64,000 bases of DNA, taken from IMG/VR virus record IMGVR_UViG_3300036760_000522, positions 62,001-126,000 of that record; one strand, given 5' to 3'. The position numbers and the translations under genes are program-made. This document shows positions 54,503-63,333 of this stretch, piece after piece. Position 1 is the stretch's first letter; the number at the start of each line of letters is the position of its first letter. Below the pieces are notes generated by a model. That model was given only the letters and a program-made list of their open reading frames with translations, searched no databases and had not been told where the DNA came from.

Positions 54503-55090
54503 TCAGGCGGCTTCGAGATACGGACGCCATTCAAGCGGAGCGTTCCCGATGTCGACTCGAGGCCCGTGAAGAGGCAGAACTCTGGGTCGGTGAGGAACAA
54601 CAAGAAGCACCATTCCCGACTCCTCTAACGACAAGTCGGCCTTCTTCTCATTACACGAGCGGCAGGCAGTCACGATATTCTCCCAGACCGTTTTTCCGCC
54701 TCTCGCACGAGGCACGACGTGGTCATAGTTCAGCTCCGACATCGGGAGCTTCTTGTCGCAGTAAGAACACTTGAACCCGTCGCGTTGAAAGACGTTGATT
54801 TTCGAAAATTTGATCCCCGACTTCATCGCTTGAACCTTGCGGCGCAAGACGGCAACCGCAGGAACCTTGATCACGAGGCTCTCAGCGTCGGTCCCAATCA
54901 CGTGACTGAGAGCACGTTTCAACTCCGGAAAAGTGCGAAGCGTCTGTCGATCAATGTGCGCAAGGACTTCGTCGTACTGTGCGAGGACAGTGACAGTTCC
55001 CTTGAACATCTTGGTGACGGCGTCTTTCCAGTCAACGATCTCGTGTGGCCGATAATGCTGGTTCAGTACTAGTGTTTGTGCGTAGGACAT
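54503..55090 (-). CDS. HNH endonuclease
   Basis: RDGFKCSYC...DHVVPRARGG...WENIVTACRSCNEKK. Confidence 0.92.
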   Translation of the reverse strand: MSYAQTLVLNQHYRPHEIVDWKDAVTKMFKGTVTVLAQYDEVLAHIDRQTLRTFPELKRALSHVIGTDAESLVIKVPAVAVLRRKVQAMKSGIKFSKINVFQRDGFKCSYCDKKLPMSELNYDHVVPRARGGKTVWENIVTACRSCNEKKADLSLEESGMVLLVVPHRPRVLPLHGPRVDIGNAPLEWRPYLEAA

Positions 55091-56425: not shown

Positions 56426-56797
56426 ATGACGACTGTTGTATTAATCGTTGATGACGAGCACTTCGCGCTCCACGCTCTAGTGAAAAGTCTGGCTTGTGAT
56501 CACTACAAAGTCATGACGGCAAAGAGTGGTGAGGCAGCACTCAAACTGATCCGAAGCCACTTGGGCGAATCCATCAAACTCCTACTACTCGATTGGTCAC
56601 TGCGGGACATGAGCGGTCTGACTCTAGCAGAGGAAGCCAAGAAATTGATCCCCGACGTGAAAATCCTCTACGTCTCGGGCTACGCCGCAAGTGACAAGTC
56701 GCTAGAAAGTTGTTGGATCACCAAACCGTTCGACCAAAAGGAGCTACGTGCCCGCGTTTTGCGGGAGCTGAAAATTGGGGTGAGCGACGGGAATTGA
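56426..56797 (+). CDS. Stand-alone CheY-like response regulator
   Basis: LIVDDE, LLLLDW, VSGY, TKPF. Confidence 0.9.
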   Translation: MTTVVLIVDDEHFALHALVKSLACDHYKVMTAKSGEAALKLIRSHLGESIKLLLLDWSLRDMSGLTLAEEAKKLIPDVKILYVSGYAASDKSLESCWITKPFDQKELRARVLRELKIGVSDGN

Positions 56798-57144: not shown

Positions 57145-57221
57145 TGGCATCCCAGGATGGATTCGAACCACCAGCCGTCGAGTTAGAAGCTCGCCGCACG
57201 GTCCAATCGTGCTGCTGGGAC
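57145..57221 (-). tRNA. tRNA-Arg(TCT)
   Basis: Cloverleaf, loop CTTCTAA, CCA encoded. Confidence 0.9.
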
Positions 57222-57254
57222 AAATTCATTTATGGTCCTTCAAGGGCAAGGCTT

Positions 57255-57566
57255 ATGTATTCCTACGACCGACGCAAGACTGCGGCTGTGGACAAGGTTC
57301 CTATCTTCAACAAGTTTTCCTTGCAACTCACGACCGGTCAGGTCGAAAAGATGATACAGAAGCACTACGAGATCGAGGAAGGATCCCTAGAGTTCAGACC
57401 TGCCACAACGCATCGTGACACCGTTCATGTGGACTTCTTCTACAAACTGGCCGGCAAAGATGTCCAAAGAAGTAACGGCGTAGGATCAGGTACTGTGGTC
57501 CTACGGGCAGAGCATCAAGGGAAGCAGATCCAGATCACAGCATTTGTGAACATCGACGACAACTGA
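57255..57566 (+). CDS. Small protein beginning MYSYDRRKTAA, inserted antisense in the tRNA array
   Basis: ATG at 57255; TTTAT upstream. Confidence 0.6.
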   Translation: MYSYDRRKTAAVDKVPIFNKFSLQLTTGQVEKMIQKHYEIEEGSLEFRPATTHRDTVHVDFFYKLAGKDVQRSNGVGSGTVVLRAEHQGKQIQITAFVNIDDN

Positions 57567-57572
57567 ACGTTG

Positions 57573-57643
57573 TAGCGAGCGAGGGACTCGAACCCTCTCC
57601 GGCGCCGTATGAAAGCACTGGTCCTCCCTGGACCGAGCTCGCC
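57573..57643 (-). tRNA. tRNA-Met or Ile2 (CAT)
   Basis: Cloverleaf, loop TTCATAC, no encoded CCA. Confidence 0.8.
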
Positions 57644-57654
57644 AATTTGGTGTT

Positions 57655-57728
57655 TGGCTGGGGCGCCAGGGATCGAACCTGGATCAACTGGTCCAAAGCC
57701 AGCCGTCCTACCTTTAGACGACACCCCA
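57655..57728 (-). tRNA. tRNA-Gln(TTG)
   Basis: Cloverleaf, loop CTTTGGA, CCA. Confidence 0.92.
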
Positions 57729-57733
57729 AAAAT

Positions 57734-57815
57734 TGGCGGAGGTCGAATCGAACGCCACACCCGAAAGTGCCATCAGTTTAGCAAACTGCGGATCACCCAG
57801 TGATCGTCAACCTCC
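57734..57815 (-). pseudogene. tRNA-Ser(GCT) with about 4 nt missing from the T-stem 3' strand
   Basis: Loop TTGCTAA, long variable arm; TGGCG-TTCGATT-C lacks its pairing partner. Confidence 0.7.
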
Positions 57816-57822
57816 ATTAATT

Positions 57823-57905
57823 TGGCGGAGAGGACAGGAATCGAACCCGCTACGGAATTACCGCGACCGTTTTCAAGACGGTTTGCCACCATTAGCCACC
57901 TCTCC
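57823..57905 (-). tRNA. tRNA-Ser(TGA)
   Basis: Loop CTTGAAA, long variable arm, GCCA end. Confidence 0.88.
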
Positions 57906-58227
57906 AAAAGACCTTGAGCTGTTCGCTCATTGAGACACGAGACCGTTGTTCTTGTCTCGTCTGATGATTCCACGAGTCTTTCGACCCGGTTGCCTTGTGA
58001 GGCTTACAAAACAGACAACCGCCTCGAGCGTTTTTTCGTTTCTTGCGTTTGTGGTGCACAGGATCTCCTTGCCGCCGTCAGCGGCTTGTTAGTGATCCTG
58101 CGATGCTTCATCATTTCGACTTTTGGTTGTTGTAGGAAGGGCAGCCTGGTCTCTTGCATTTCAATTTCTCCACCTGTCTTCAGACGGGTGGAGACTTCAG
58201 GGTACCACAGTTTACAAGGACCGGGTC

Positions 58228-58548
58228 CTAGTTTCGCTTGAGAGCTTCTCTGAGAAACTCTTTTGTTGCGTTGATTAGCTCAACGTCACTGACTAGCGCA
58301 TCGACAAATTCAGGAGCCCGCAAGTGCAGCACACGGGTCGTGATAGCCGGTAGCCCGCGCTCCTTCACGTATTCGTACATAGCAAGCACCAACATCATGG
58401 CGACGCCACGAGGAGCAGATTTTTCTTGACCGGCACTAGCCAACAACAGAGGATAAAGGTACTGACGAAAATGCGATTGATCGTTGATCTTCAGTAGTCG
58501 CTCAAGCATCTCTTCACGGCTCGGTAGCGTGATGTCAGTTTCGATCAT
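58228..58548 (-). CDS. Hypothetical protein
   Basis: Likely start MIETD at 58548; the longer ORF call overlaps tRNA-Ala. Confidence 0.55.
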   Translation of the reverse strand: MIETDITLPSREEMLERLLKINDQSHFRQYLYPLLLASAGQEKSAPRGVAMMLVLAMYEYVKERGLPAITTRVLHLRAPEFVDALVSDVELINATKEFLREALKRN

Positions 58549-58595
58549 TACGCAAACAACACCAAACTTCAGATTTTTGTTGATCACCCGGACAA

Positions 58596-58626
58596 GTAAC
58601 AGTAGAAAACGGTCGGGAATTGAAGG
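58596..58626 (+). repeat. Dispersed CRISPR-repeat-like unit, copy B
   Basis: GTAACAGTAGAAAACGGTCGGGAATTGAAGG, preceded by an AT-rich flank and abutting a tRNA 5' fragment. Confidence 0.65.
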
Positions 58627-58638
58627 TGCTACAGGGAC
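58627..58638 (-). pseudogene. 5' stub of a tRNA (GTCCCTG-TA-GCA)
   Basis: Starts 3 nt after the CCA of tRNA-Ala and resembles the 5' end of tRNA-Arg in this window. Confidence 0.5.
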
Positions 58639-58641
58639 ATT

Positions 58642-58717
58642 TGGTGGAACCGAAGGGAATTGAACCCTCAACCTCTTGTGTGCAGGACAAGCGCTCTCCC
58701 AATTGAGCTACGGCCCC
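58642..58717 (-). tRNA. tRNA-Ala(TGC)
   Basis: G3:U70, loop CCTGCAC (C33), CCA. Confidence 0.9.
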
Positions 58718-58727
58718 AAGATTTGTT

Positions 58728-58805
58728 TGGTGCTCCCACGGGGCGACGATCCCCGTTTTCCGCCTTGAAAGGGCAGTGTCCTAACCAAACGTAGACGATG
58801 AGAGC
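58728..58805 (-). tRNA. tRNA-Glu(TTC)
   Basis: Loop CTTTCAA; atypical T-loop ATCGTCG; CCA. Confidence 0.85.
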
Positions 58806-59057
58806 AGTGGTGTGTTTGGCGTCCAATGGCCTCTAGGAGGCGTAGAGATCCCAATTTTTCTGCACCGCTTTTTGACAGCTGAAGAAGAAACTCCGAACTC
58901 CTTGGTTGGACACGCAGCATGTGGCCGAACAAGCCAGGAGTAATGTCGCGAGCATCACATTCTATGACAAGGCACTACTCGACACGGAGCACAAGGATAT
59001 CTACTTGCAAGCTCTCGGGGACTTCTATCACCCCGAGACGCCCGCCCTGTGAGACAG

Positions 59058-59130
59058 TAGTGCTCCAGAGACTCGAACTCTGCACGATCCGCTTATCAGA
59101 CGAACCAGGTCAACCCGACCGTCGAGCACC
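59058..59130 (-). tRNA. tRNA-Ile(GAT), atypical D arm
   Basis: Loop CTGATAA; T arm CAGAG-TTCGAGT-CTCTG. Confidence 0.75.
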
Positions 59131-59175
59131 AAAACTCAATTCATGCTAAAATCACGAAATGGTCACACTTACAAG

Positions 59176-59248
59176 CAGGGGTGAACGGAATCGAACCGTC
59201 TCGACAAGGGTTTTGGAGGCCCTCCGGCTTACCCACAGCCACACCCCT
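59176..59248 (-). tRNA. tRNA-Trp(CCA)
   Basis: Loop CTCCAAA; acceptor AGGGGTG/CACCCCT. Confidence 0.85.
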
Positions 59249-59419
59249 AGACCGTCAATTTACATCTTTGTTGCTCTTCTCGTTGCAGCCAACGCAGCCA
59301 TTTTTTGGTACGGGTGGCGCCAGTATCAAAAGCAAGAGGAAGGTGTCGTCATCCAATGCACTGTGCGAGCGGCACAATTCCACTATCGTTTGTCCGACGT
59401 CTGTACGGGCCCGTACAGC

Positions 59420-59857
59420 TCAGATAGAACCTGTGCCGAGAAGTTGGATCTTTGTCAGCAGCAGTAACAAGTACTTGATCGCCAGCCCATTGCACAAAAT
59501 GTGCATGAGGTTGTCAGTGATGATGAGCAACCAAGTGCTCAACCAAGGTGGGAGATTGGCGGGATAACCTGTACCCGAGCAATCCTTCCAAGAAGGATTG
59601 CTACCTGGAGGCGCCAAAAAGTTCTTGAACCAACAAACGTGCCGGGCGAGTCGCCAACGATCAATCACGAAATGTGTACCGGCAATCGTGAGGAGCACTT
59701 CGACGCTCTGACTCAACACTAAAAACGGCAACGTGTACAGCGCGACATGCGCGAGTGCGGCTCGGGTCTTAGTGACTTTTTCCGTTGCCATCCACTGGCT
59801 TTGGAGGACGTAGTCACCGATCACGTGCAGCACAAGTTGGTCGGCAGTTACAAGCAT
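59420..59857 (-). CDS. DUF3307-like membrane protein
   Basis: HVIGDYVLQSQWMA...H...HFVIDRW...DNLMH. Confidence 0.8.
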   Translation of the reverse strand: MLVTADQLVLHVIGDYVLQSQWMATEKVTKTRAALAHVALYTLPFLVLSQSVEVLLTIAGTHFVIDRWRLARHVCWFKNFLAPPGSNPSWKDCSGTGYPANLPPWLSTWLLIITDNLMHILCNGLAIKYLLLLLTKIQLLGTGSI

Positions 59858-59941
59858 GATTAGACAACACCGAAAGGAGAGGCCTCCCCTCAAGGCCCTT
59901 TACTCAGAAAATCATCAACACCATAGGTACCTCCTTTCGAT

Positions 59942-60015
59942 TGGCGCTGCGTACGGGAATCGAACCCGTTTCGCCTCTTAGACAGAGAGGTCGCGATCCA
60001 ATCGCGTCACGCAGC
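59942..60015 (-). tRNA. tRNA-Asp(GTC)
   Basis: Loop CTGTCTA (U37), GCCA end. Confidence 0.88.
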
Positions 60016-60049
60016 ATTTGAAACACGGTGTTACACCTGACGATATCGC

Positions 60050-60646
60050 ATGATCGGACTCACCAGGCGACAAGAAATGGTCCTGAACGTCGTTCGGGAT
60101 CGTATCAGGAAATTCGGTTACCCGCCTTCCCTGCGAGAACTTTGTGTCGCTTTAGATTTACACTCCACGCACGGCATCAGTCAACACCTGGACGCACTCG
60201 AACGCAAAGGCCACATCCAGCGTACACGTCAAGGCGCGAGTCGCGGGATCAAGCTCATTGAAAGCACCACAGTGTCAGAAACTCAAACGGTCAAAGTTTA
60301 TTCGCGAACTTTCGAAGAAGGGAACGTTGTCGACACCATCCAAGTCGGTTCCTCAATGATCAACAAGCCTGTCGTCGGGTTCCTGATGCGCGGAGACGCA
60401 CTCGAAAGATCAGGGATTCTAGATGGAGACTATTTGCTCGTTCAACGCGGTGCCTTCATTACTTCTGGGAGCTTGGTTTGCTTGCACGTTGGCGATGAGG
60501 TCTGCGCCAGGTACTACCACAAGGAGAGCGACTACGTGCGATTCGATGCCGCTCACCCAGAAAAGTCCTCCATACTTGTCCGGAACGCAGACTTCAAGGC
60601 GTCGATGCTTGAGGGCCTCGTCCATAGTGTTTATCGGAAGTGCTAG
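60050..60646 (+). CDS. lexA: LexA-like repressor lacking autoproteolysis residues
   Basis: LTRRQ...GYPPSLREL...HLDALERKG winged HTH; S24-like domain with GDAL instead of GDSM. Confidence 0.85.
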   Translation: MIGLTRRQEMVLNVVRDRIRKFGYPPSLRELCVALDLHSTHGISQHLDALERKGHIQRTRQGASRGIKLIESTTVSETQTVKVYSRTFEEGNVVDTIQVGSSMINKPVVGFLMRGDALERSGILDGDYLLVQRGAFITSGSLVCLHVGDEVCARYYHKESDYVRFDAAHPEKSSILVRNADFKASMLEGLVHSVYRKC

Positions 60647-60648
60647 GT

Positions 60649-60939
60649 ATGGAAGCTAAACGAGTCGTAGCCCGGTTCCGTTCCTTGAAGGAAGCAGCGA
60701 AGCCGTCGACCGAAGCTGTCTCGGAGATTCAAGCAGCGATCGAAGCTCTCAAGAGGATCGCTAAAGGTAGCGGCAACCCGAAGCGTCTCTTGTTTTCAGC
60801 AGTTTGGAGTCTTGGAGCCGCTGCGGAGAAGATGGGGCAAGAAACGAGGGTATCCTCAGCGCTCTATCACGCTGCTGGCATCGTTAACCAGACTTGGTCG
60901 GTCCAAGACACCCGCGACTACTTCTCGAAAGGCGCCTAA
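60649..60939 (+). CDS. Small protein with N-terminal AKRVVARF motif
   Basis: ATG at 60649; TTTAT 14 nt upstream. Confidence 0.6.
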   Translation: MEAKRVVARFRSLKEAAKPSTEAVSEIQAAIEALKRIAKGSGNPKRLLFSAVWSLGAAAEKMGQETRVSSALYHAAGIVNQTWSVQDTRDYFSKGA

Positions 60940-60978
60940 GCTACCCGGTCCACGCTAAACCCGGGTTGGTGGGAGAAA

Positions 60979-61341
60979 TTGAGACACGACAACATTTTCG
61001 AACTCCTGGAAGCTGTGCGCCAACACAAGCTCGAAACCAGAGAGTGCTTCCTGCCCATCAACTCCGTCAAGGACCGTGACGTCGGCTTCACCACTGCTGA
61101 CGGGGACGGGCCTGCCGTGACTTGGACGATGCCGACCAAGTTGGCGAAAGAGAGTGCCATCGAACGCGGAACACCAGAGGCGCGGAGAATCAAAGATCTT
61201 CTCGGCAACCACATGGGGAGAATTCAACTCCTCACGGAGCTGAGAGCCGGAACCTTGGACTATGGGATCCCAAACACTCAGCCTGTGATTGTTGTCGAGG
61301 AGTCGGAAGAGGAAGCTTTCCTGATGGGGATCGTCGACTAG
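60979..61341 (+). CDS. Hypothetical protein
   Basis: GGGAG RBS and TTG start; hairpin at 61351-61366 downstream. Confidence 0.5.
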   Translation: MRHDNIFELLEAVRQHKLETRECFLPINSVKDRDVGFTTADGDGPAVTWTMPTKLAKESAIERGTPEARRIKDLLGNHMGRIQLLTELRAGTLDYGIPNTQPVIVVEESEEEAFLMGIVD

Positions 61342-61394
61342 GGTCAATTAGCCCTAACGGTAGGGCAACCTGGTAGCCTCTCAACGTCTGACGG

Positions 61395-62651
61395 TTAAAA
61401 AACTGTCGATGCCCAAATAGCAAAGGGAACGTCTGCGAGCAAGAAGCGATGTGGATTGAAGAAGCGATCGCTCTCGCCGAAGTCCTCGTTCACGAACACG
61501 TCGTAGTCCGCGTTTTCGTAAGCGGCTTCCGTGAACTCAAGCTCAGCACCGAACCCGCCATGCGCACCAAGCGCCAAGACTTTGCCCTCGAAGGCCGCTA
61601 GGTTGTCCGTGTACGTCGTATCGCCTGCCAGGCCGCACGTAATGTCCCTGATTGTGGTCAGGCTGGCGTAGGAGTCGACGATGCCACCAATCTTGAGGTA
61701 ACGAGGTTCTGAGGCGAAGTCGACACCGGTTGAGTCTCCTGCGAGGAAGTGGAAGCTTGGCGTCGGCCAGTTGGGATTGTCGAGATGTTGTGTGCTGACC
61801 ACGTAGAAGACCTGGTCATTCGTCGCGTTCACGATCCCAAGCTCAGCAAGCTTGGCCGCCAAGAACTCAAGCCCTGGGATCCCCGGCACTGGCGAGATCC
61901 CTGTTGGGTCAGCTTGCTTCAGTTGAAACAGCAACGCGAAGATTTGCGGAGTTGGGTCGAAGTAGATCCCGAGAGAGGTGACGAACTGTAGGAGCCCACA
62001 GTTGGGTGCCGAGAACGCCTGCTGTGTTGCGTCGGCGACCATCGAACCCTCCCAAAGGAACAAGCCCGCATAGTGGTCAGGGAACGCGTTGACGGTCGCT
62101 TGTGCGAACATGGCGCCACCGACGTAGCCTCCAATCACGACCTTCTGGCTGGGGTTGTAGGCGGCAAGGACAAGGCCCCTCACGAACTCAGCGTCGTCGA
62201 TCCTGGTCTGAACGGTCCAACTGCCCATCGCGAGACATCCGGTTGACTCACACGTCCCTGGGGCTTGCTTCGACAGCCTGTCGTCGATCACCCAGACATC
62301 GAACCCTAGCGTTGCGAGGGAGCCCAGAAAGGACTTCCGGTAGTTGGTCGTCTCTGTGAGCTCGTACCATCGGACGTCGTATCCAAATGGTCCGTGAAGA
62401 ATGACCGGCTTGTGTGAGTACGAAGACTTGACGCGAGTCACCCCAAACACGTTCAGAGGATCTGTCCCCTGCTGGACGGTGTGCTTGGTTCGTGTGAGAC
62501 CCGTCGCAGGGTTGTCGATCACCGTGGCAGTGACAGAGTAGTCGCTGAGTGCTTGTGTGACCACCTCGACATCTTGTGAGGCTTGTTGATCAGGTGCGCC
62601 TGAGCACGCAAAAAGTAGGGCAACGGCGAGTGTGATTTGGATGGTTTTCAT
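61395..62651 (-). CDS. Alpha/beta-hydrolase-fold lipoprotein, probably inactive
   Basis: Lipobox-like LFAC, VILHG, GFDVWVIDDR; elbow GYVGG lacks Ser. Confidence 0.7.
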   Translation of the reverse strand: MKTIQITLAVALLFACSGAPDQQASQDVEVVTQALSDYSVTATVIDNPATGLTRTKHTVQQGTDPLNVFGVTRVKSSYSHKPVILHGPFGYDVRWYELTETTNYRKSFLGSLATLGFDVWVIDDRLSKQAPGTCESTGCLAMGSWTVQTRIDDAEFVRGLVLAAYNPSQKVVIGGYVGGAMFAQATVNAFPDHYAGLFLWEGSMVADATQQAFSAPNCGLLQFVTSLGIYFDPTPQIFALLFQLKQADPTGISPVPGIPGLEFLAAKLAELGIVNATNDQVFYVVSTQHLDNPNWPTPSFHFLAGDSTGVDFASEPRYLKIGGIVDSYASLTTIRDITCGLAGDTTYTDNLAAFEGKVLALGAHGGFGAELEFTEAAYENADYDVFVNEDFGESDRFFNPHRFLLADVPFAIWASTVF

Positions 62652-62697
62652 GATGTGGGGAAACCTACGATCCAAAATACGATCAAGTCAATATTTA

Positions 62698-62773
62698 TGG
62701 AGCGGGTGACCGGAATCGAACCGGCCGACATTTGCTTGGAAGGCAACGACCTCGCCATTGAGGTGACACCCGC
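62698..62773 (-). tRNA. tRNA-Gly(TCC)
   Basis: Loop CTTCCAA, U73, CCA. Confidence 0.9.
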
Positions 62774-62781
62774 GAGAATAG

Positions 62782-62853
62782 CTGTAGGGGAGGGATTCGA
62801 ACCCCCGATCTGTCGGTTAACAGCCGACCGCTTTACCGCTTAGCCACCCTACA
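62782..62853 (-). tRNA. tRNA-Asn(GTT)
   Basis: Loop CTGTTAA, G73. Confidence 0.9.
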
Positions 62854-62854
62854 A

Positions 62855-62921
62855 TGGCGTCCCATGACGGATTCGAACCGTCGCTACCTGCGTGAGAAGC
62901 AAACGTCCTGAGCCACTAGAC
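62855..62921 (-). pseudogene. tRNA-Glu(CTC), positions 1-9 missing
   Basis: Begins at D-stem GTC immediately after repeat copy A; loop TTCTCAC; CCA present. Confidence 0.75.
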
Positions 62922-62951
62922 CCTTCAATTCCCAATCGATCTGATCCCTAC
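62922..62951 (-). repeat. Dispersed CRISPR-repeat-like unit, copy A
   Basis: GTAGGGATCAGATCGATTGGGAATTGAAGG, with an AT-rich upstream flank similar to copy B. Confidence 0.7.
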
Positions 62952-63093
62952 TTACGCGGATCACAAAACAAAGAAACAAGTTTGTGGGCAGATCGGTACC
63001 TTGGTGGGCACCGATCTGCCACACGAGTGAAAAACACGAATTGTCAAAAAGCAAGGTCCTCGAAAGGACTTTTGAAGAGACCTGAAGTCTCAG

Positions 63094-63165
63094 TTCCAGG
63101 AGCTGGAATCGAACCAGCGTTCCGTCGTTCAGAGCGACGTGGCCTACCAATTAGCCGATCCTGGA
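63094..63165 (-). tRNA. tRNA-Gln(CTG)
   Basis: Loop CTCTGAA; full cloverleaf. Confidence 0.9.
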
Positions 63166-63181
63166 ATACGAACTTCTTCTG

Positions 63182-63254
63182 TGGGCTGCCCGAGAATCGA
63201 ACTCGGAACTTTCAGGTTAAGAACCTGCTACTCTACCTGTTGAGTTAGCAACCC
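63182..63254 (-). tRNA. tRNA-Lys(CTT)
   Basis: Loop TTCTTAA. Confidence 0.9.
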
Positions 63255-63260
63255 ATCAAG

Positions 63261-63333
63261 TGGAGGTGACAGGGATCGAACCTGCAATCTACGTGTTAAA
63301 AGCACGTTGCATTACCAATTTAGCTACACCTCC
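63261..63333 (-). tRNA. tRNA-Lys(TTT)
   Basis: Loop CTTTTAA. Confidence 0.88.

What the first reader, a model, noticed from the sequence alone, without database searches (positions are those of the whole stretch)
60050..60646. Phage-encoded non-cleavable LexA: possible SOS super-repressor
The DNA-binding domain looks intact, but all three autocleavage elements are altered: the Ala-Gly site region reads YSRTFEEG, the catalytic Ser motif reads GDAL (normally GDSM), and the catalytic Lys motif reads VCARY (normally T[VL]KR). Non-cleavable LexA alleles are known to repress SOS dominantly. Loss of all three in an intact ORF suggests selection to keep host SOS, prophage induction or SOS-linked defence off. 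Overlapping palindromes AACAC-G-GTGTT and GGTGT-T-ACACC at 60022-60037 could be an operator.
Basis: partly seen in the sequence, partly recalled or inferred. Interest (0 to 1): 0.75.

Follow-up and report, generated by a model that had tools for sequence, protein, structure and literature searches.

The report
Phage LexA copy that cannot self-cleave
A 300-kb phage from sediment carries an intact copy of the bacterial DNA-damage repressor LexA that has lost all three parts of its self-cutting machinery. It belongs to an apparently undescribed group of such "damage-blind" LexA copies on phage-like DNA, and the DNA it controls is still unknown.

Summary
ORF 60050-60646 (+), 198 aa, is a full-length LexA homologue (PF01726 + PF00717) with a confident LexA fold. 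Aligned to E. coli LexA, Ala84-Gly85 is Val83-Tyr84, Ser119 is Ala117 and Lys156 is Arg154.

The window lies in a 301.5-kb virus record with terminal repeats, so "phage-encoded" holds. The gene is not a one-off wreck. It groups with about 17 divergent LexA-like proteins (at most 40% identical to each other). In almost all of them the Lys is Arg, and the Ser is usually Ala, Gly or Thr. Their nearest cellular relatives are Polyangiaceae (Myxococcota) LexA proteins, all catalytically intact. All eight genomic contexts inspected look like phage or mobile DNA. Three show tmRNA, then dead lexA, then radC. One sits directly behind a recA.

The DNA-binding domain is the best conserved part, and a homodimer is predicted. 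I therefore read it as a RecA*-insensitive dimeric repressor.

The "SOS super-repressor" reading is only partly supported for this copy. Its recognition helix differs from every cellular LexA sampled. No Polyangiaceae-type SOS boxes occur in the phage genome. The upstream palindromes are unique and not statistically compelling. The target DNA and the host remain unknown.

The parts
60050..60646 (+). lexA-like gene, 198 codons plus stop. Full-length LexA homologue without a catalytic dyad or scissile bond.
   Evidence: ORF list; Pfam PF01726 + PF00717; PDB LexA hits at E 5e-19; AF2 pLDDT 90.7; Foldseek top hits are full-length LexA structures.
60050..60265 (+). Winged-helix DNA-binding domain (residues 1-72). 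Helices 6-22, 28-34 and 40-52, wing strands 56-58 and 67-69. Recognition helix reads STHGISQHLDALERKG.
   Evidence: Pfam 1-66; DSSP on the model; TM 0.88 to the 1lea DBD. Nine of the 11 invariant columns of the dead clade lie here. Only 1 of 16 differences from the sister phage lies here.
60281..60643 (+). S24-peptidase-like beta domain (residues 78-198), catalytically dead. Predicted dimer interface at residues 78, 95-103, 119, 122-124, 142 and 191-198.
   Evidence: Pfam PF00717; TM about 0.8 and rmsd 2.2-2.5 A to LexA C-terminal domains; homodimer score 0.46 against best control 0.00; 40-46% identity to Polyangiaceae LexA C-domains.
60296..60301 (+). Val83-Tyr84 at the position of the scissile Ala84-Gly85 of E. 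coli LexA.
   Evidence: Alignments.
60398..60400 (+). Ala117 (GCA) at the position of the nucleophile Ser119. Motif is GDAL instead of G[DEM]SM.
   Evidence: Alignments; codon read.
60509..60511 (+). Arg154 (AGG) at the position of the general base Lys156. This Arg is nearly invariant across the dead clade.
   Evidence: Alignments; A4 summary lists R154 as at least 90% conserved.
60022..60037 (.). Overlapping 5-1-5 palindromes AACACGGTGTT and GGTGTTACACC in the 34-bp spacer between tRNA-Asp and the ATG. Candidate autoregulatory operator, unproven.
   Evidence: Sequence; unique in the genome; no enriched dyad family elsewhere; identical in the sister phage, but so is the whole surrounding block.
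59942..60015 (-). tRNA-Asp(GTC), divergent neighbour. Its 5' end lies 34 bp from the lexA-like start codon, and it is part of a 14-15 gene tRNA island.
   Evidence: ARAGORN; also present next to the gene in the sister phage L002.
60649..60939 (+). Small co-oriented ORF starting 3 nt after the lexA-like stop; no family hit. It may be co-transcribed. Shown as context.
   Evidence: ORF list; no Pfam hit; conserved at 92% in L002.
60979..61341 (+). Second small co-oriented ORF (120 aa); no family hit. Shown as context.
   Evidence: ORF list; no Pfam hit.

Best explanation
The gene encodes a working but catalytically dead descendant of LexA, carried by a huge, probably lytic phage. It keeps the winged-helix DNA-binding head and uses the former S24 protease domain only as a dimerisation module. 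With Val-Tyr for Ala-Gly, Ala for Ser119 and Arg for Lys156, it cannot be inactivated by RecA*-stimulated self-cleavage. It would therefore be a damage-blind dimeric repressor whose occupancy of its operators is uncoupled from the DNA-damage signal. That signal includes RecA filaments made by the phage's own RecA. It descends from a lineage of such proteins that branched next to Polyangia (Myxococcota) LexA and spread on phage-like DNA. In this copy the recognition helix has moved away from the ancestral one. Its operator is therefore most likely not the Polyangiaceae-type SOS box but a different sequence. One candidate is the palindromic element directly in front of its own start codon (autoregulation, as in cellular lexA).

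Shown here: the domain architecture, the three substitutions, the fold, the clade, the phage context and the predicted dimer. Inferred: non-cleavability, DNA binding, repressor action and the identity of the operator.
For: Architecture and substitutions. Fold: pLDDT 90.7, with full-length LexA structures as top Foldseek hits. Dimer: ipSAE 0.46 against best control 0.00. That mark was reached by 21 of 30 solved one-chain pairs and 0 of 23 single chains, and the interface lies on the C-domain. Maintained function: an all-dead clade of 18 representatives in the quick tree (SH-aLRT 91). In the careful tree 14 dead rows including the query sit behind a starred branch (96/97), and all 17 dead rows fall on one side in 72% of bootstraps. 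Nine of the clade's 11 invariant columns lie in the DNA-binding domain, and Arg154 is at least 90% conserved. Against the sister phage there is 1 non-synonymous and no synonymous change in the DBD, and 9 non-synonymous plus 6 synonymous in the C-domain. The gene is near-identical in contigs from at least five sediment or soil metagenomes. Origin: the dead-clade profile scores about 300 bits on Polyangiaceae LexA, and all 120 top hits have Ser and Lys. The query C-domain is 40-46% identical to them. Phage context: a virus record with terminal repeats; no tyrosine integrase found; an own RecA homologue. All eight contexts of clade members look phage- or MGE-like. Changed specificity: the reading head is unlike all sampled LexAs, and there are no Polyangiaceae-type SOS boxes in the genome. 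Precedents: GIL01 gp6, a phage LexA-DBD homologue with its own operator (PMC6182141), and the naturally non-cleavable Synechocystis LexA with non-SOS roles (PMC3091678).
Against: There is no experimental evidence of any kind. Non-cleavability is inferred from E. coli mutant behaviour (S119A, K156A, G85D; from established knowledge, not tested here). No recurring operator was found in the 301-kb genome, so a phage regulon is not visible. The single upstream palindrome is statistically weak and no sigma-70-type promoter is called there. dN/dS against the only close relative is about 0.5 on 16 changes, which does not by itself prove purifying selection. The dimer prediction may reflect the model's memory of solved LexA dimers. 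Grouping of the fast-evolving dead sequences could partly be long-branch attraction (branches 0.9-1.8 against 0.005-0.2).
Confidence: 0.5

Rival explanations
1. SOS super-repressor. The protein binds the host's SOS boxes and, being uncleavable, holds the host SOS regulon off while the phage replicates and its RecA forms filaments. This would block SOS-linked prophage induction, bacteriocin or tailocin lysis, and SOS-linked defence.
For: The family is derived from cellular LexA, and its DBD is its most conserved part. Several clade members keep the exact Polyangiaceae recognition helix RSTNGVNDHLRALERKG. The sampled 8-20 kb of their contigs show no SOS box, so their targets would be on the host chromosome. 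Link to RecA: one clade member sits 16 nt behind a recA in a replication/recombination operon, and this phage encodes a RecA. Uncleavable LexA alleles are dominant SOS repressors in E. coli (established knowledge; also noted in PMC3091678). The tRNA set reads mostly A-ending codons, which fits a high-GC host such as Myxococcota (inference).
Against: This copy's recognition helix differs at N41H, V43I, N44S, D45Q and R48D from the Polyangiaceae helix and matches no cellular LexA sampled. Asn41 contacts operator bases in E. coli LexA (PMC5999292). The exhaustive search found no cellular LexA closer than about 42% overall or about 56% in the DBD. The host is unknown, and the phage's CRISPR repeat was not found in 401 Polyangia genomes. 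Phage GC is 53%, against 65-70% for the other clade members' contigs.
Confidence: 0.3
2. RecA* decoy or RecA modulator. The dead C-domain still docks in the groove of RecA filaments, as LexA S119A does. It would then compete with host LexA or prophage repressors for the co-protease, or tune the phage's own RecA. DNA binding would be secondary.
For: Uncleavable LexA mutants form stable complexes with RecA filaments; the solved complexes 8gms, 8trg and 8s7g are among the structural matches. There is recA-lexA* adjacency in L211, and this phage has a RecA. Arg at the Lys156 position is itself conserved, which suggests a retained structural role for the former active site.
Against: The DBD, not the C-domain, is the most conserved part of the family. 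A pure decoy would not need it. No RecA-contact residues were checked, and no complex with RecA was modelled.
Confidence: 0.1
3. Subunit poison. Through its conserved C-domain interface it heterodimerises with host LexA. This would produce dimers with mismatched heads that bind SOS boxes poorly, so SOS would be de-repressed rather than repressed.
For: The C-domain is 40-46% identical to Polyangiaceae LexA while the head is diverged. The predicted interface uses the same C-terminal strand and loops as LexA dimers.
Against: Purely inferential. No heterodimer was modelled and the host is unknown. The strong conservation of the DBD argues that the protein reads DNA itself.
Confidence: 0.05
4. Decaying relic. 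A captured host lexA that lost activity and drifts without function.
For: dN/dS is about 0.5 against the only close relative. Branches in the dead clade are long.
Against: The frame is open and the fold confident. The same substitutions persist in a clade whose members are at most 40% identical. The DBD is almost invariant between the sister phages and across metagenomes sampled between 2016 and 2025. Synteny is conserved in relatives.
Confidence: 0.05

Closest known systems
Cellular LexA (E. coli LexA; nearest cellular relatives here are Polyangiaceae/Polyangiales LexA)
   Same: Same two-domain architecture (PF01726 wHTH + PF00717), same fold and same predicted C-domain dimer. Overall identity is up to 45% to Polyangiaceae LexA.
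   Different: No Ala-Gly bond, no Ser nucleophile and no Lys base. Encoded by a phage. The recognition helix differs from all sampled cellular LexAs. No SOS box stands in front of the gene.
Laboratory non-inducible LexA alleles (Ind-: S119A, K156A, G85D)
   Same: The same three functional positions are hit. The structures of these mutants (1jhh, 1jhe, 1jhf) are among the best matches. The expected consequence is the same: a repressor blind to RecA*.
   Different: Here the state is natural, all three elements are changed at once, it is fixed in a diversified clade, and it is carried by phages.
Synechocystis sp. PCC 6803 LexA (naturally non-cleavable; Gly-Gly and Ser->Asp)
   Same: A natural LexA that lost the cleavage site and nucleophile and is thought to have taken non-SOS regulatory roles (PMC3091678).
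   Different: That protein is chromosomal and is the only LexA of its cell. The substitutions differ. It has no phage context and no Lys->Arg signature.
Phage GIL01 gp6, and the LexA-DBD-only proteins of lambdoid and Bacillus phages
   Same: Phage-encoded LexA homologues that bind their own operator rather than the host SOS box. gp6 recognises GaCACAn nTGTGaC and activates a late promoter (PMC6182141). DBD-only hits are common in GenBank phages.
   Different: Those proteins are truncated to the DNA-binding domain. The present protein keeps a full, folded but dead S24 domain. No full-length relative of this kind was found in 50,697 GenBank phage records. The full-length hits listed there were host lexA or unannotated fragments, and their catalytic residues were not inspected.
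Phage GIL01 gp7
   Same: A phage factor that dampens SOS by keeping LexA on DNA and blocking RecA-mediated cleavage (PMC4551915). It is a functional analogue of the super-repressor idea.
   Different: A small, unrelated protein that acts on host LexA. It is not a LexA homologue itself.
CI/C2-type S24 phage repressors
   Same: Phage-encoded repressors with an S24 C-domain (structural hits 2hnf, 3bdn, 1f39).
   Different: They have a different (lambda-type HTH) DNA-binding domain and are catalytically active and RecA*-inducible. This phage shows no integrase, so a lysogeny switch is not evident.

Membership tests
LexA family (PF01726 + PF00717 two-domain repressors) | N-terminal LexA-type winged helix-turn-helix domain | tested here: met
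   PF01726 at E 8e-20, 70.8 bits against cut-off 23.7. TM 0.88 and rmsd 1.4 A to the 1lea DBD.
LexA family (PF01726 + PF00717 two-domain repressors) | C-terminal S24 beta-fold domain | tested here: met
   PF00717 at 36.8 bits against cut-off 23.3. TM about 0.8 and rmsd 2.2-2.5 A to LexA C-domains.
LexA family (PF01726 + PF00717 two-domain repressors) | Dimerisation through the C-domain | tested here: inconclusive
   The model supports a homodimer: score 0.46 against best control 0.00, a mark reached by 21 of 30 solved one-chain pairs and 0 of 23 single chains. This is a prediction only and may come from memory of solved LexA dimers.
Self-cleaving S24 peptidases (functional LexA, UmuD, CI) | Scissile Ala-Gly (or Cys-Gly) bond in the cleavage-site region | tested here: not met
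   Val83-Tyr84 align with Ala84-Gly85. There is no Ala-Gly anywhere in linker residues 72-97.
Self-cleaving S24 peptidases (functional LexA, UmuD, CI) | Nucleophilic Ser (E. coli Ser119) | tested here: not met
   Ala117 in GDAL.
Self-cleaving S24 peptidases (functional LexA, UmuD, CI) | General-base Lys (E. coli Lys156) | tested here: not met
   Arg154 in VCARY. This Arg is conserved across the clade.
Self-cleaving S24 peptidases (functional LexA, UmuD, CI) | RecA*- or alkali-induced autocleavage | not testable with these tools
   Needs purified protein.
SOS regulator / SOS super-repressor | Recognition helix matching that of the host's LexA | tested here: inconclusive
   It does not match Polyangiaceae LexA (5 changes) or any sampled cellular LexA (best 8 of 14). 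The true host is unknown.
SOS regulator / SOS super-repressor | SOS box in its own promoter (autoregulation) or in the element's genome | tested here: not met
   A Polyangiaceae SOS-box matrix built from 51 lexA promoters gives 6 hits of at least 10 bits in the phage genome, against 3-10 in shuffles. No site scores above 0 bits in 60000-60060, directly upstream of the gene. Only this one box type was tested.
SOS regulator / SOS super-repressor | Binding to host SOS boxes and repression of SOS genes in vivo | not testable with these tools
   Needs the host, or EMSA and reporter assays.
Phage LexA-DBD regulators (GIL01 gp6 type) | [quoted passage not shown] | tested here: not met
   The protein is full length, with a folded S24-like domain.

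The most novel reading that the evidence does not exclude
Phages of Myxococcota-like soil and sediment bacteria carry a diversified family of pseudo-protease LexA proteins captured from host LexA. Early in this family the catalytic Lys became Arg, and the Ser and the Ala-Gly bond were lost later. They would act as RecA*-proof SOS super-repressors or RecA-filament decoys, letting phages run their own RecA-dependent replication and recombination without triggering the host SOS response. The family is embedded in conserved tmRNA/tRNA-lexA*-radC or recA-lexA* modules. The copy in this window would be a member that has additionally evolved a new DNA specificity.
Probability: 0.3. Interest if true: 0.8.

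Novelty: new variant of a known kind. Interest (0 to 1): 0.62.

Why it matters
Phages are known to read or manipulate the host SOS switch in three ways: through cleavable CI-type repressors, through anti-repressors, and through small LexA-binding proteins such as GIL01 gp7. A phage that brings its own full-length LexA which cannot be switched off by RecA* would be a fourth and very direct way to uncouple gene control from DNA damage. That control could be exerted on host SOS genes or on phage genes.

The recurrence of the same substitutions in a divergent clade is a further point. So are the conserved Arg at the old Lys position and the repeated placement next to tmRNA, tRNA, radC or recA genes. 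Together these suggest a selected function rather than decay.

The idea is easy to test with cleavage assays, DAP-seq and SOS reporters. The protein would also be a natural, compact, damage-insensitive LexA-type repressor with a possibly new operator specificity.

In six searches of the paper library I found no description of full-length, catalytically dead LexA homologues in phages. That is not proof that none exists.

Tried and rejected
1. Operator regulon. Nothing recurs except a CRISPR-like array. No phage regulon is visible.

2. Host-type SOS boxes. I derived the Polyangiaceae box (ACACCYGTTCAGTA, between a TTGAC -35 and a TAnnnT -10) from 51 lexA promoters. Scanning the phage genome and eight contigs carrying dead-LexA relatives gave nothing above shuffled controls.

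3. Promoter call. No sigma-70-like plus-strand promoter is found in front of the gene. My hand reading (TTGAAA as -35, weak -10, near-leaderless start) is not good enough to claim.

4. Host assignment.
- The phage CRISPR repeat was not found in 401 Polyangia genomes.
- The phage RecA belongs to a huge-phage RecA clade and carries no host signal.
- Runs holding the gene are sediment and soil metagenomes only, and no RNA run was found.
- The host stays unknown.

5. Chromosomal paralogue idea. In 301 Polyangia-class genomes, 288 have a LexA match and most list a single one. The extra matches were not inspected. The dead clade does not look like a standard chromosomal paralogue.

6. Selection test. 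Only one distinct close relative exists (L002 and L009 are identical). It differs by 16 substitutions, giving dN/dS of about 0.5, which is not decisive. Reads from other runs added only one variant.

7. IMG/VR scan with the clade alignment found mostly DBD-only proteins and no other close relative.

8. ARAGORN missed the tmRNAs that Rfam later confirmed.

9. A shared AACACG half-site upstream of P0146, the other member with the H41/Q45 head, was looked for by eye. The resemblance is too weak to use.

10. No heterodimer or RecA complex was modelled.
Full report
**What is there**

Window 60050-60646 (+) is an uninterrupted 198-codon ORF.

- Pfam finds the LexA DNA-binding domain at residues 1-66 (E 8e-20) and Peptidase_S24 at residues 90-179 (E 3.5e-9). 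Both are above the curated cut-offs.
- Against PDB sequences the best matches are full-length LexA proteins (E. coli 1jhh/1jhf/3jso, Thermotoga 3k2z; E 5e-19 to 6e-17), aligned end to end.
- An AlphaFold2 model built on 21 homologues has mean pLDDT 90.7. It shows a three-helix winged-helix head, a low-confidence hinge at residues 73-75 and a beta-rich C-domain.
- Foldseek returns LexA structures first. C-domains superpose at TM about 0.8 and 2.2-2.5 A, and the DNA-binding domain of 1lea at TM 0.88.

**The three cleavage elements**

In the HMMER alignment to E. coli LexA, and in MAFFT alignments with 15, 150 and 20 homologues, the substitutions are consistent:

| E. coli LexA | This protein | Motif | Window codons |
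|---|---|---|---|
| Ala84-Gly85 (scissile bond) | Val83-Tyr84 | TVKVYSR under GRVAAGE | 60296-60301 |
| Ser119 (nucleophile) | Ala117 | GDAL under GMSM | 60398-60400 |
| Lys156 (general base) | Arg154 | DEVCARY under DEVTVKR | 60509-60511 |

By established knowledge of E. coli LexA (S119A, K156A and G85D are non-inducible alleles), any one of these changes blocks or cripples cleavage. I did not test this.

**It is a phage gene**

- The window is bases 62001-126000 of a 301,550-bp IMG/VR virus record with direct terminal repeats.
- The window has a long co-oriented block of large ORFs, with baseplate-hub and protease PHROG hits.
- It has 14 tRNA genes by ARAGORN plus one more by Rfam, all on the minus strand at 57145-63333.
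- The lexA-like gene sits inside this tRNA island. Its ATG is 34 bp from the 5' end of tRNA-Asp.
- No tyrosine integrase was found in the genome. A 486-aa RecA homologue is present. That RecA belongs to a group of long RecAs found on very large contigs.
- This is the only S24-domain gene and the only LexA-type DNA-binding domain in the genome.

**Close relatives**

One other phage carries the gene at 94% protein identity. It is seen as a 7.9-kb Logan contig (L002) and a 159-kb IMG/VR contig (L003/L009), and the gene is identical in the two records.

- The two lineages differ by 16 substitutions and one codon insertion in the gene.
- One non-synonymous and no synonymous change falls in the DNA-binding domain.
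- Nine non-synonymous and six synonymous changes fall in the C-domain. Overall dN/dS is about 0.5, which is too few changes to be decisive.
- The block from tRNA-Asp through the first 345 nt or so of the ORF has a single difference, while flanking DNA is 88-94% identical.
- Contigs from three further sediment or soil metagenomes match the window exactly over the parts they cover, except 60110 A>G (Lys21Glu). All four other runs examined carry that variant.

**A clade of dead LexA proteins**

The exhaustive phmmer search (1.84 billion representatives) gave 7,729 hits. Apart from the sister phage, the best are about 40% identical.

- Of the 150 best, 114 keep Ser and Lys.
- About 25 have Arg at the Lys position, together with Ala, Gly, Thr, Asp or Ser at the nucleophile position.
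- In a quick ML tree of 134 sequences the query falls in a group of 18 representatives that are all catalytically altered (SH-aLRT 91). This group is sister (92) to three intact proteins.
- In a careful tree of 48 sequences, 14 altered sequences including the query are separated from everything else by a well-supported branch (96/97). All 17 altered sequences lie on one side of a branch in 72% of bootstrap trees.
- Their branches are long (0.9-1.8 against 0.005-0.2 for the cellular relatives), so some long-branch attraction cannot be excluded.
- Within the group, nine of the 11 invariant columns lie in the DNA-binding domain (Gln8, Pro26, Arg29, Glu30, Ser39, His46, Lys53, Gly54, Arg65). The other two are Gly126 and Arg196. 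Arg154 itself is at least 90% conserved.
- Two members (P0092, P0094) still have Val-Ala-Gly and Ser but already have Arg. This suggests Lys->Arg came first. That is an inference, because the tree is unrooted.

**Origin**

- The intact sister proteins are LexA of Polyangiaceae/Polyangiales (Myxococcota), 65-78% identical to LexA of many such MAGs.
- A profile of the dead clade scores about 300 bits (E about 1e-84) on Polyangiaceae LexA, and all 120 top hits keep Ser and Lys.
- The query's C-domain is 40-46% identical to them. Its DNA-binding domain is about equally far (48-56%) from Polyangiaceae-type and Desulfuromonadales-type LexA.
- In 301 genomes of the Polyangia class, 288 have a LexA match and most list one. 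The dead proteins therefore do not look like a routine chromosomal paralogue.

**Contexts**

Eight genomic contexts of clade members were inspected. All are dominated by short unannotated ORFs together with phage- or MGE-typical replication and recombination genes.

| Locus (contig) | Context |
|---|---|
| L002 | Sister phage of the window |
| L004 (166 kb) | SSB, NUDIX, RadC, DEAD helicase |
| L005 | YqaJ, DnaA_C, DUF5131, Dam-type methylase, sigma70_r4 |
| L007 | Ligase, NUDIX, RadC, GrpE |
| L203 | Mostly hypothetical ORFs, Phage_ProQ_C_like |
| L209 | RadC |
| L210 | Mostly hypothetical ORFs, Mg_chelatase |
| L211 | RecD2-like helicase, DnaA_C, and a RecA gene ending 16 nt before the dead lexA |

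- In L004, L007 and L209 a tmRNA gene (Rfam RF00023; 107.7, 77.2 and 81.6 bits) ends 11-23 nt before the dead lexA. A radC follows within one to four genes.
- These contigs have 65-70% GC. The window's phage has 52-55%.

**Other phage collections**

- GenBank phages contain many LexA-DBD-only proteins. Among the listed hits I saw no full-length relative of this kind. The full-length hits were host lexA or unannotated fragments, and I did not inspect their catalytic residues.
- Ten full-length LexA-like genes in IMG/VR are mostly intact. A few are also degenerate: L010, L018, L012 and L015.

**What it binds**

Polyangiaceae LexA proteins have an almost invariant head (IRSTNGVNDHLRALERKGY). Several dead-clade members keep it exactly. 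For those members, binding to host SOS boxes is the simplest inference. This is supported by the absence of any such box in the sampled 8-20 kb of their contigs.

The protein in the window reads LHSTHGISQHLDALERKGH.

- It differs at N41H, V43I, N44S, D45Q and R48D.
- Asn41 contacts operator bases in the E. coli complex (PMC5999292).
- No LexA among those collected shares this head (best 8 of 14).
- One dead-clade member (P0146) shares H41, I43, Q45 and D48.

I derived the Polyangiaceae lexA promoter and box from 51 loci. It reads AATTTGAC, 6-8 nt, ACACCYGTTCAGTA with an embedded TAnnnT, and the start codon lies about 21 nt after GTTCAG.

- A matrix of this box finds nothing above shuffled controls in the 301-kb phage genome.
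- No site scores above 0 bits in 60000-60060, directly upstream of the gene.

- They share TnACACCTG with the left part of the Polyangiaceae box, but in a different register. I treat that as a weak, post-hoc resemblance.
- They occur once in the genome.
- No other dyad family is enriched.
- No sigma-70-type promoter is called there.

An autoregulatory operator remains possible but is not shown.

**Mechanism**

A homodimer is supported by the complex model (score 0.46, best control 0.00). That mark was reached by 21 of 30 solved one-chain pairs and 0 of 23 single chains. The interface is on residues 95-103, 119-124 and 191-198. The pass may reflect the model's memory of solved LexA dimers.

Four lines of evidence bear on function: the conserved head, the folded but dead C-domain, the conserved Arg, and the persistence of the type through deep divergence. 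From these I conclude that the protein is a functional, RecA*-insensitive, dimeric LexA-type DNA-binding regulator (about 0.8 for this general statement).

Whether its operators are host SOS boxes or something new is open.

| Reading | Probability |
|---|---|
| New or own operator specificity | about 0.5 |
| SOS super-repressor | about 0.3 |
| RecA* decoy or RecA modulator | about 0.1 |
| Subunit poison of host LexA | about 0.05 |
| Decaying relic | about 0.05 |

I favour a new specificity for this copy because of its diverged head. The super-repressor reading is more plausible for the head-conserving relatives.

**Known comparators**

- Natural non-cleavable LexA is known in Synechocystis 6803 (PMC3091678).
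- A phage LexA homologue with its own operator is known in GIL01 gp6, but it is truncated to the DNA-binding domain (PMC6182141).
- GIL01 gp7 dampens SOS by holding host LexA on DNA (PMC4551915).
- In six searches of the paper library I found nothing on full-length catalytically dead LexA homologues in phages.
- I therefore rate the finding a new variant of a known kind, of moderate to good interest.

Noticed in passing
Outside the window, same virus genome: G000:C1:8520-10880: A CRISPR-like array. The 36-nt repeat is GTCGAGACAGGGACCAAGGTCCCTGATGATTTCAAC with a period of about 72 bp. There are 11 near-perfect copies, followed by about 14 degenerate copies whose palindromic stem changes in a compensatory way (CAGGGACC..GGTCCCTG to CAGGAGCC..GGCTCCTG). 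The repeat was not found in 401 Polyangia genomes. No cas genes were looked for.
   Followed up: partly
Outside the window: G000:C1:242153-243613 (-), which is L206:1135-2595: The phage encodes a 486-aa RecA homologue (PF00154, E 2.9e-51). Its nearest relatives (43-51% identity) are similarly long RecAs on contigs of up to 475 kb. Cellular RecAs are only 35-40% identical. This looks like a huge-phage RecA lineage.
   Followed up: partly
L004:9658-10034, L007:9631-9982, L209:1244-1598: Three divergent phage-like contigs carry a tmRNA gene (Rfam RF00023; 108, 77 and 82 bits) that ends 11-23 nt before a catalytically dead lexA. A radC follows one to four genes later. This synteny is conserved across proteins that are at most 40% identical. 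ARAGORN missed these tmRNAs.
   Followed up: partly
L211:7071-8735: In another phage-like contig the dead lexA (P0154) starts 16 nt after a 304-aa RecA gene. Both lie in an operon with a RecD2-like helicase and a DnaA_C-domain protein.
   Followed up: no
window 57145-63333 (-): A tRNA island of 14 genes by ARAGORN, plus one more found only by Rfam at 62701-62773. Many anticodons read A-ending codons (TCT, TTG, TGA, TGC, TTC, TTT), as expected for a 53%-GC phage in a higher-GC host (the host inference is mine).
   Followed up: partly
window 59943-60395: An ultra-conserved block covering tRNA-Asp, the 34-bp spacer and the first 345 nt or so of the lexA-like ORF. It differs at one base from the sister phage L002, whereas flanking DNA is 88-94% identical (one neighbouring ORF only 73%). 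Recent recombination or extra constraint could explain this. A minus-strand promoter-like site, TTGAAC-18-TAGAAT, lies at 60445-60416 inside the ORF and points toward the tRNA. Unexplained.
   Followed up: no
window 60110: The window's A (Lys21) is the minority allele. All four other metagenome runs examined have G (Glu21), as does the sister phage.
   Followed up: yes
L002:3218-3541 against window 60649: The sister phage has an extra gene of about 300 bp between the lexA-like gene and the next ORF. It starts with the same eight codons as that ORF, which suggests a local duplication or insertion.
   Followed up: no
window 56426-56797 (+), 54503-55090 (-), 59420-59893 (-), 61395-62675 (-): Neighbouring genes: a stand-alone response-regulator receiver domain (PF00072, E 2.7e-15), an HNH endonuclease, and a DUF3307 membrane-like protein. 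There is also a 426-aa ORF with a lipoprotein-like N-terminus (…LLFACSG) and no family hit.
   Followed up: no
L089-L151 (Polyangiaceae lexA loci), 200 bp upstream of the gene: 51 of 54 Polyangiaceae lexA promoters share AATTTGAC, 6-8 nt, ACACCYGTTCAGTA, nnnT, with the start codon about 21 nt after GTTCAG. This is a Myxococcus-type SOS box lying between the -35 and -10 elements, and it implies a near-leaderless lexA mRNA.
   Followed up: partly
L010, L012, L015, L018 (IMG/VR contigs): Other, unrelated full-length LexA-like genes on viral contigs also have degenerate cleavage elements. L010 has Gly at the nucleophile position and has lost the Lys. L018 has Arg for Lys and no Ala-Gly. L012 and L015 have no Ala-Gly. 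Loss of LexA self-cleavage in phage-borne copies may be recurrent.
   Followed up: partly
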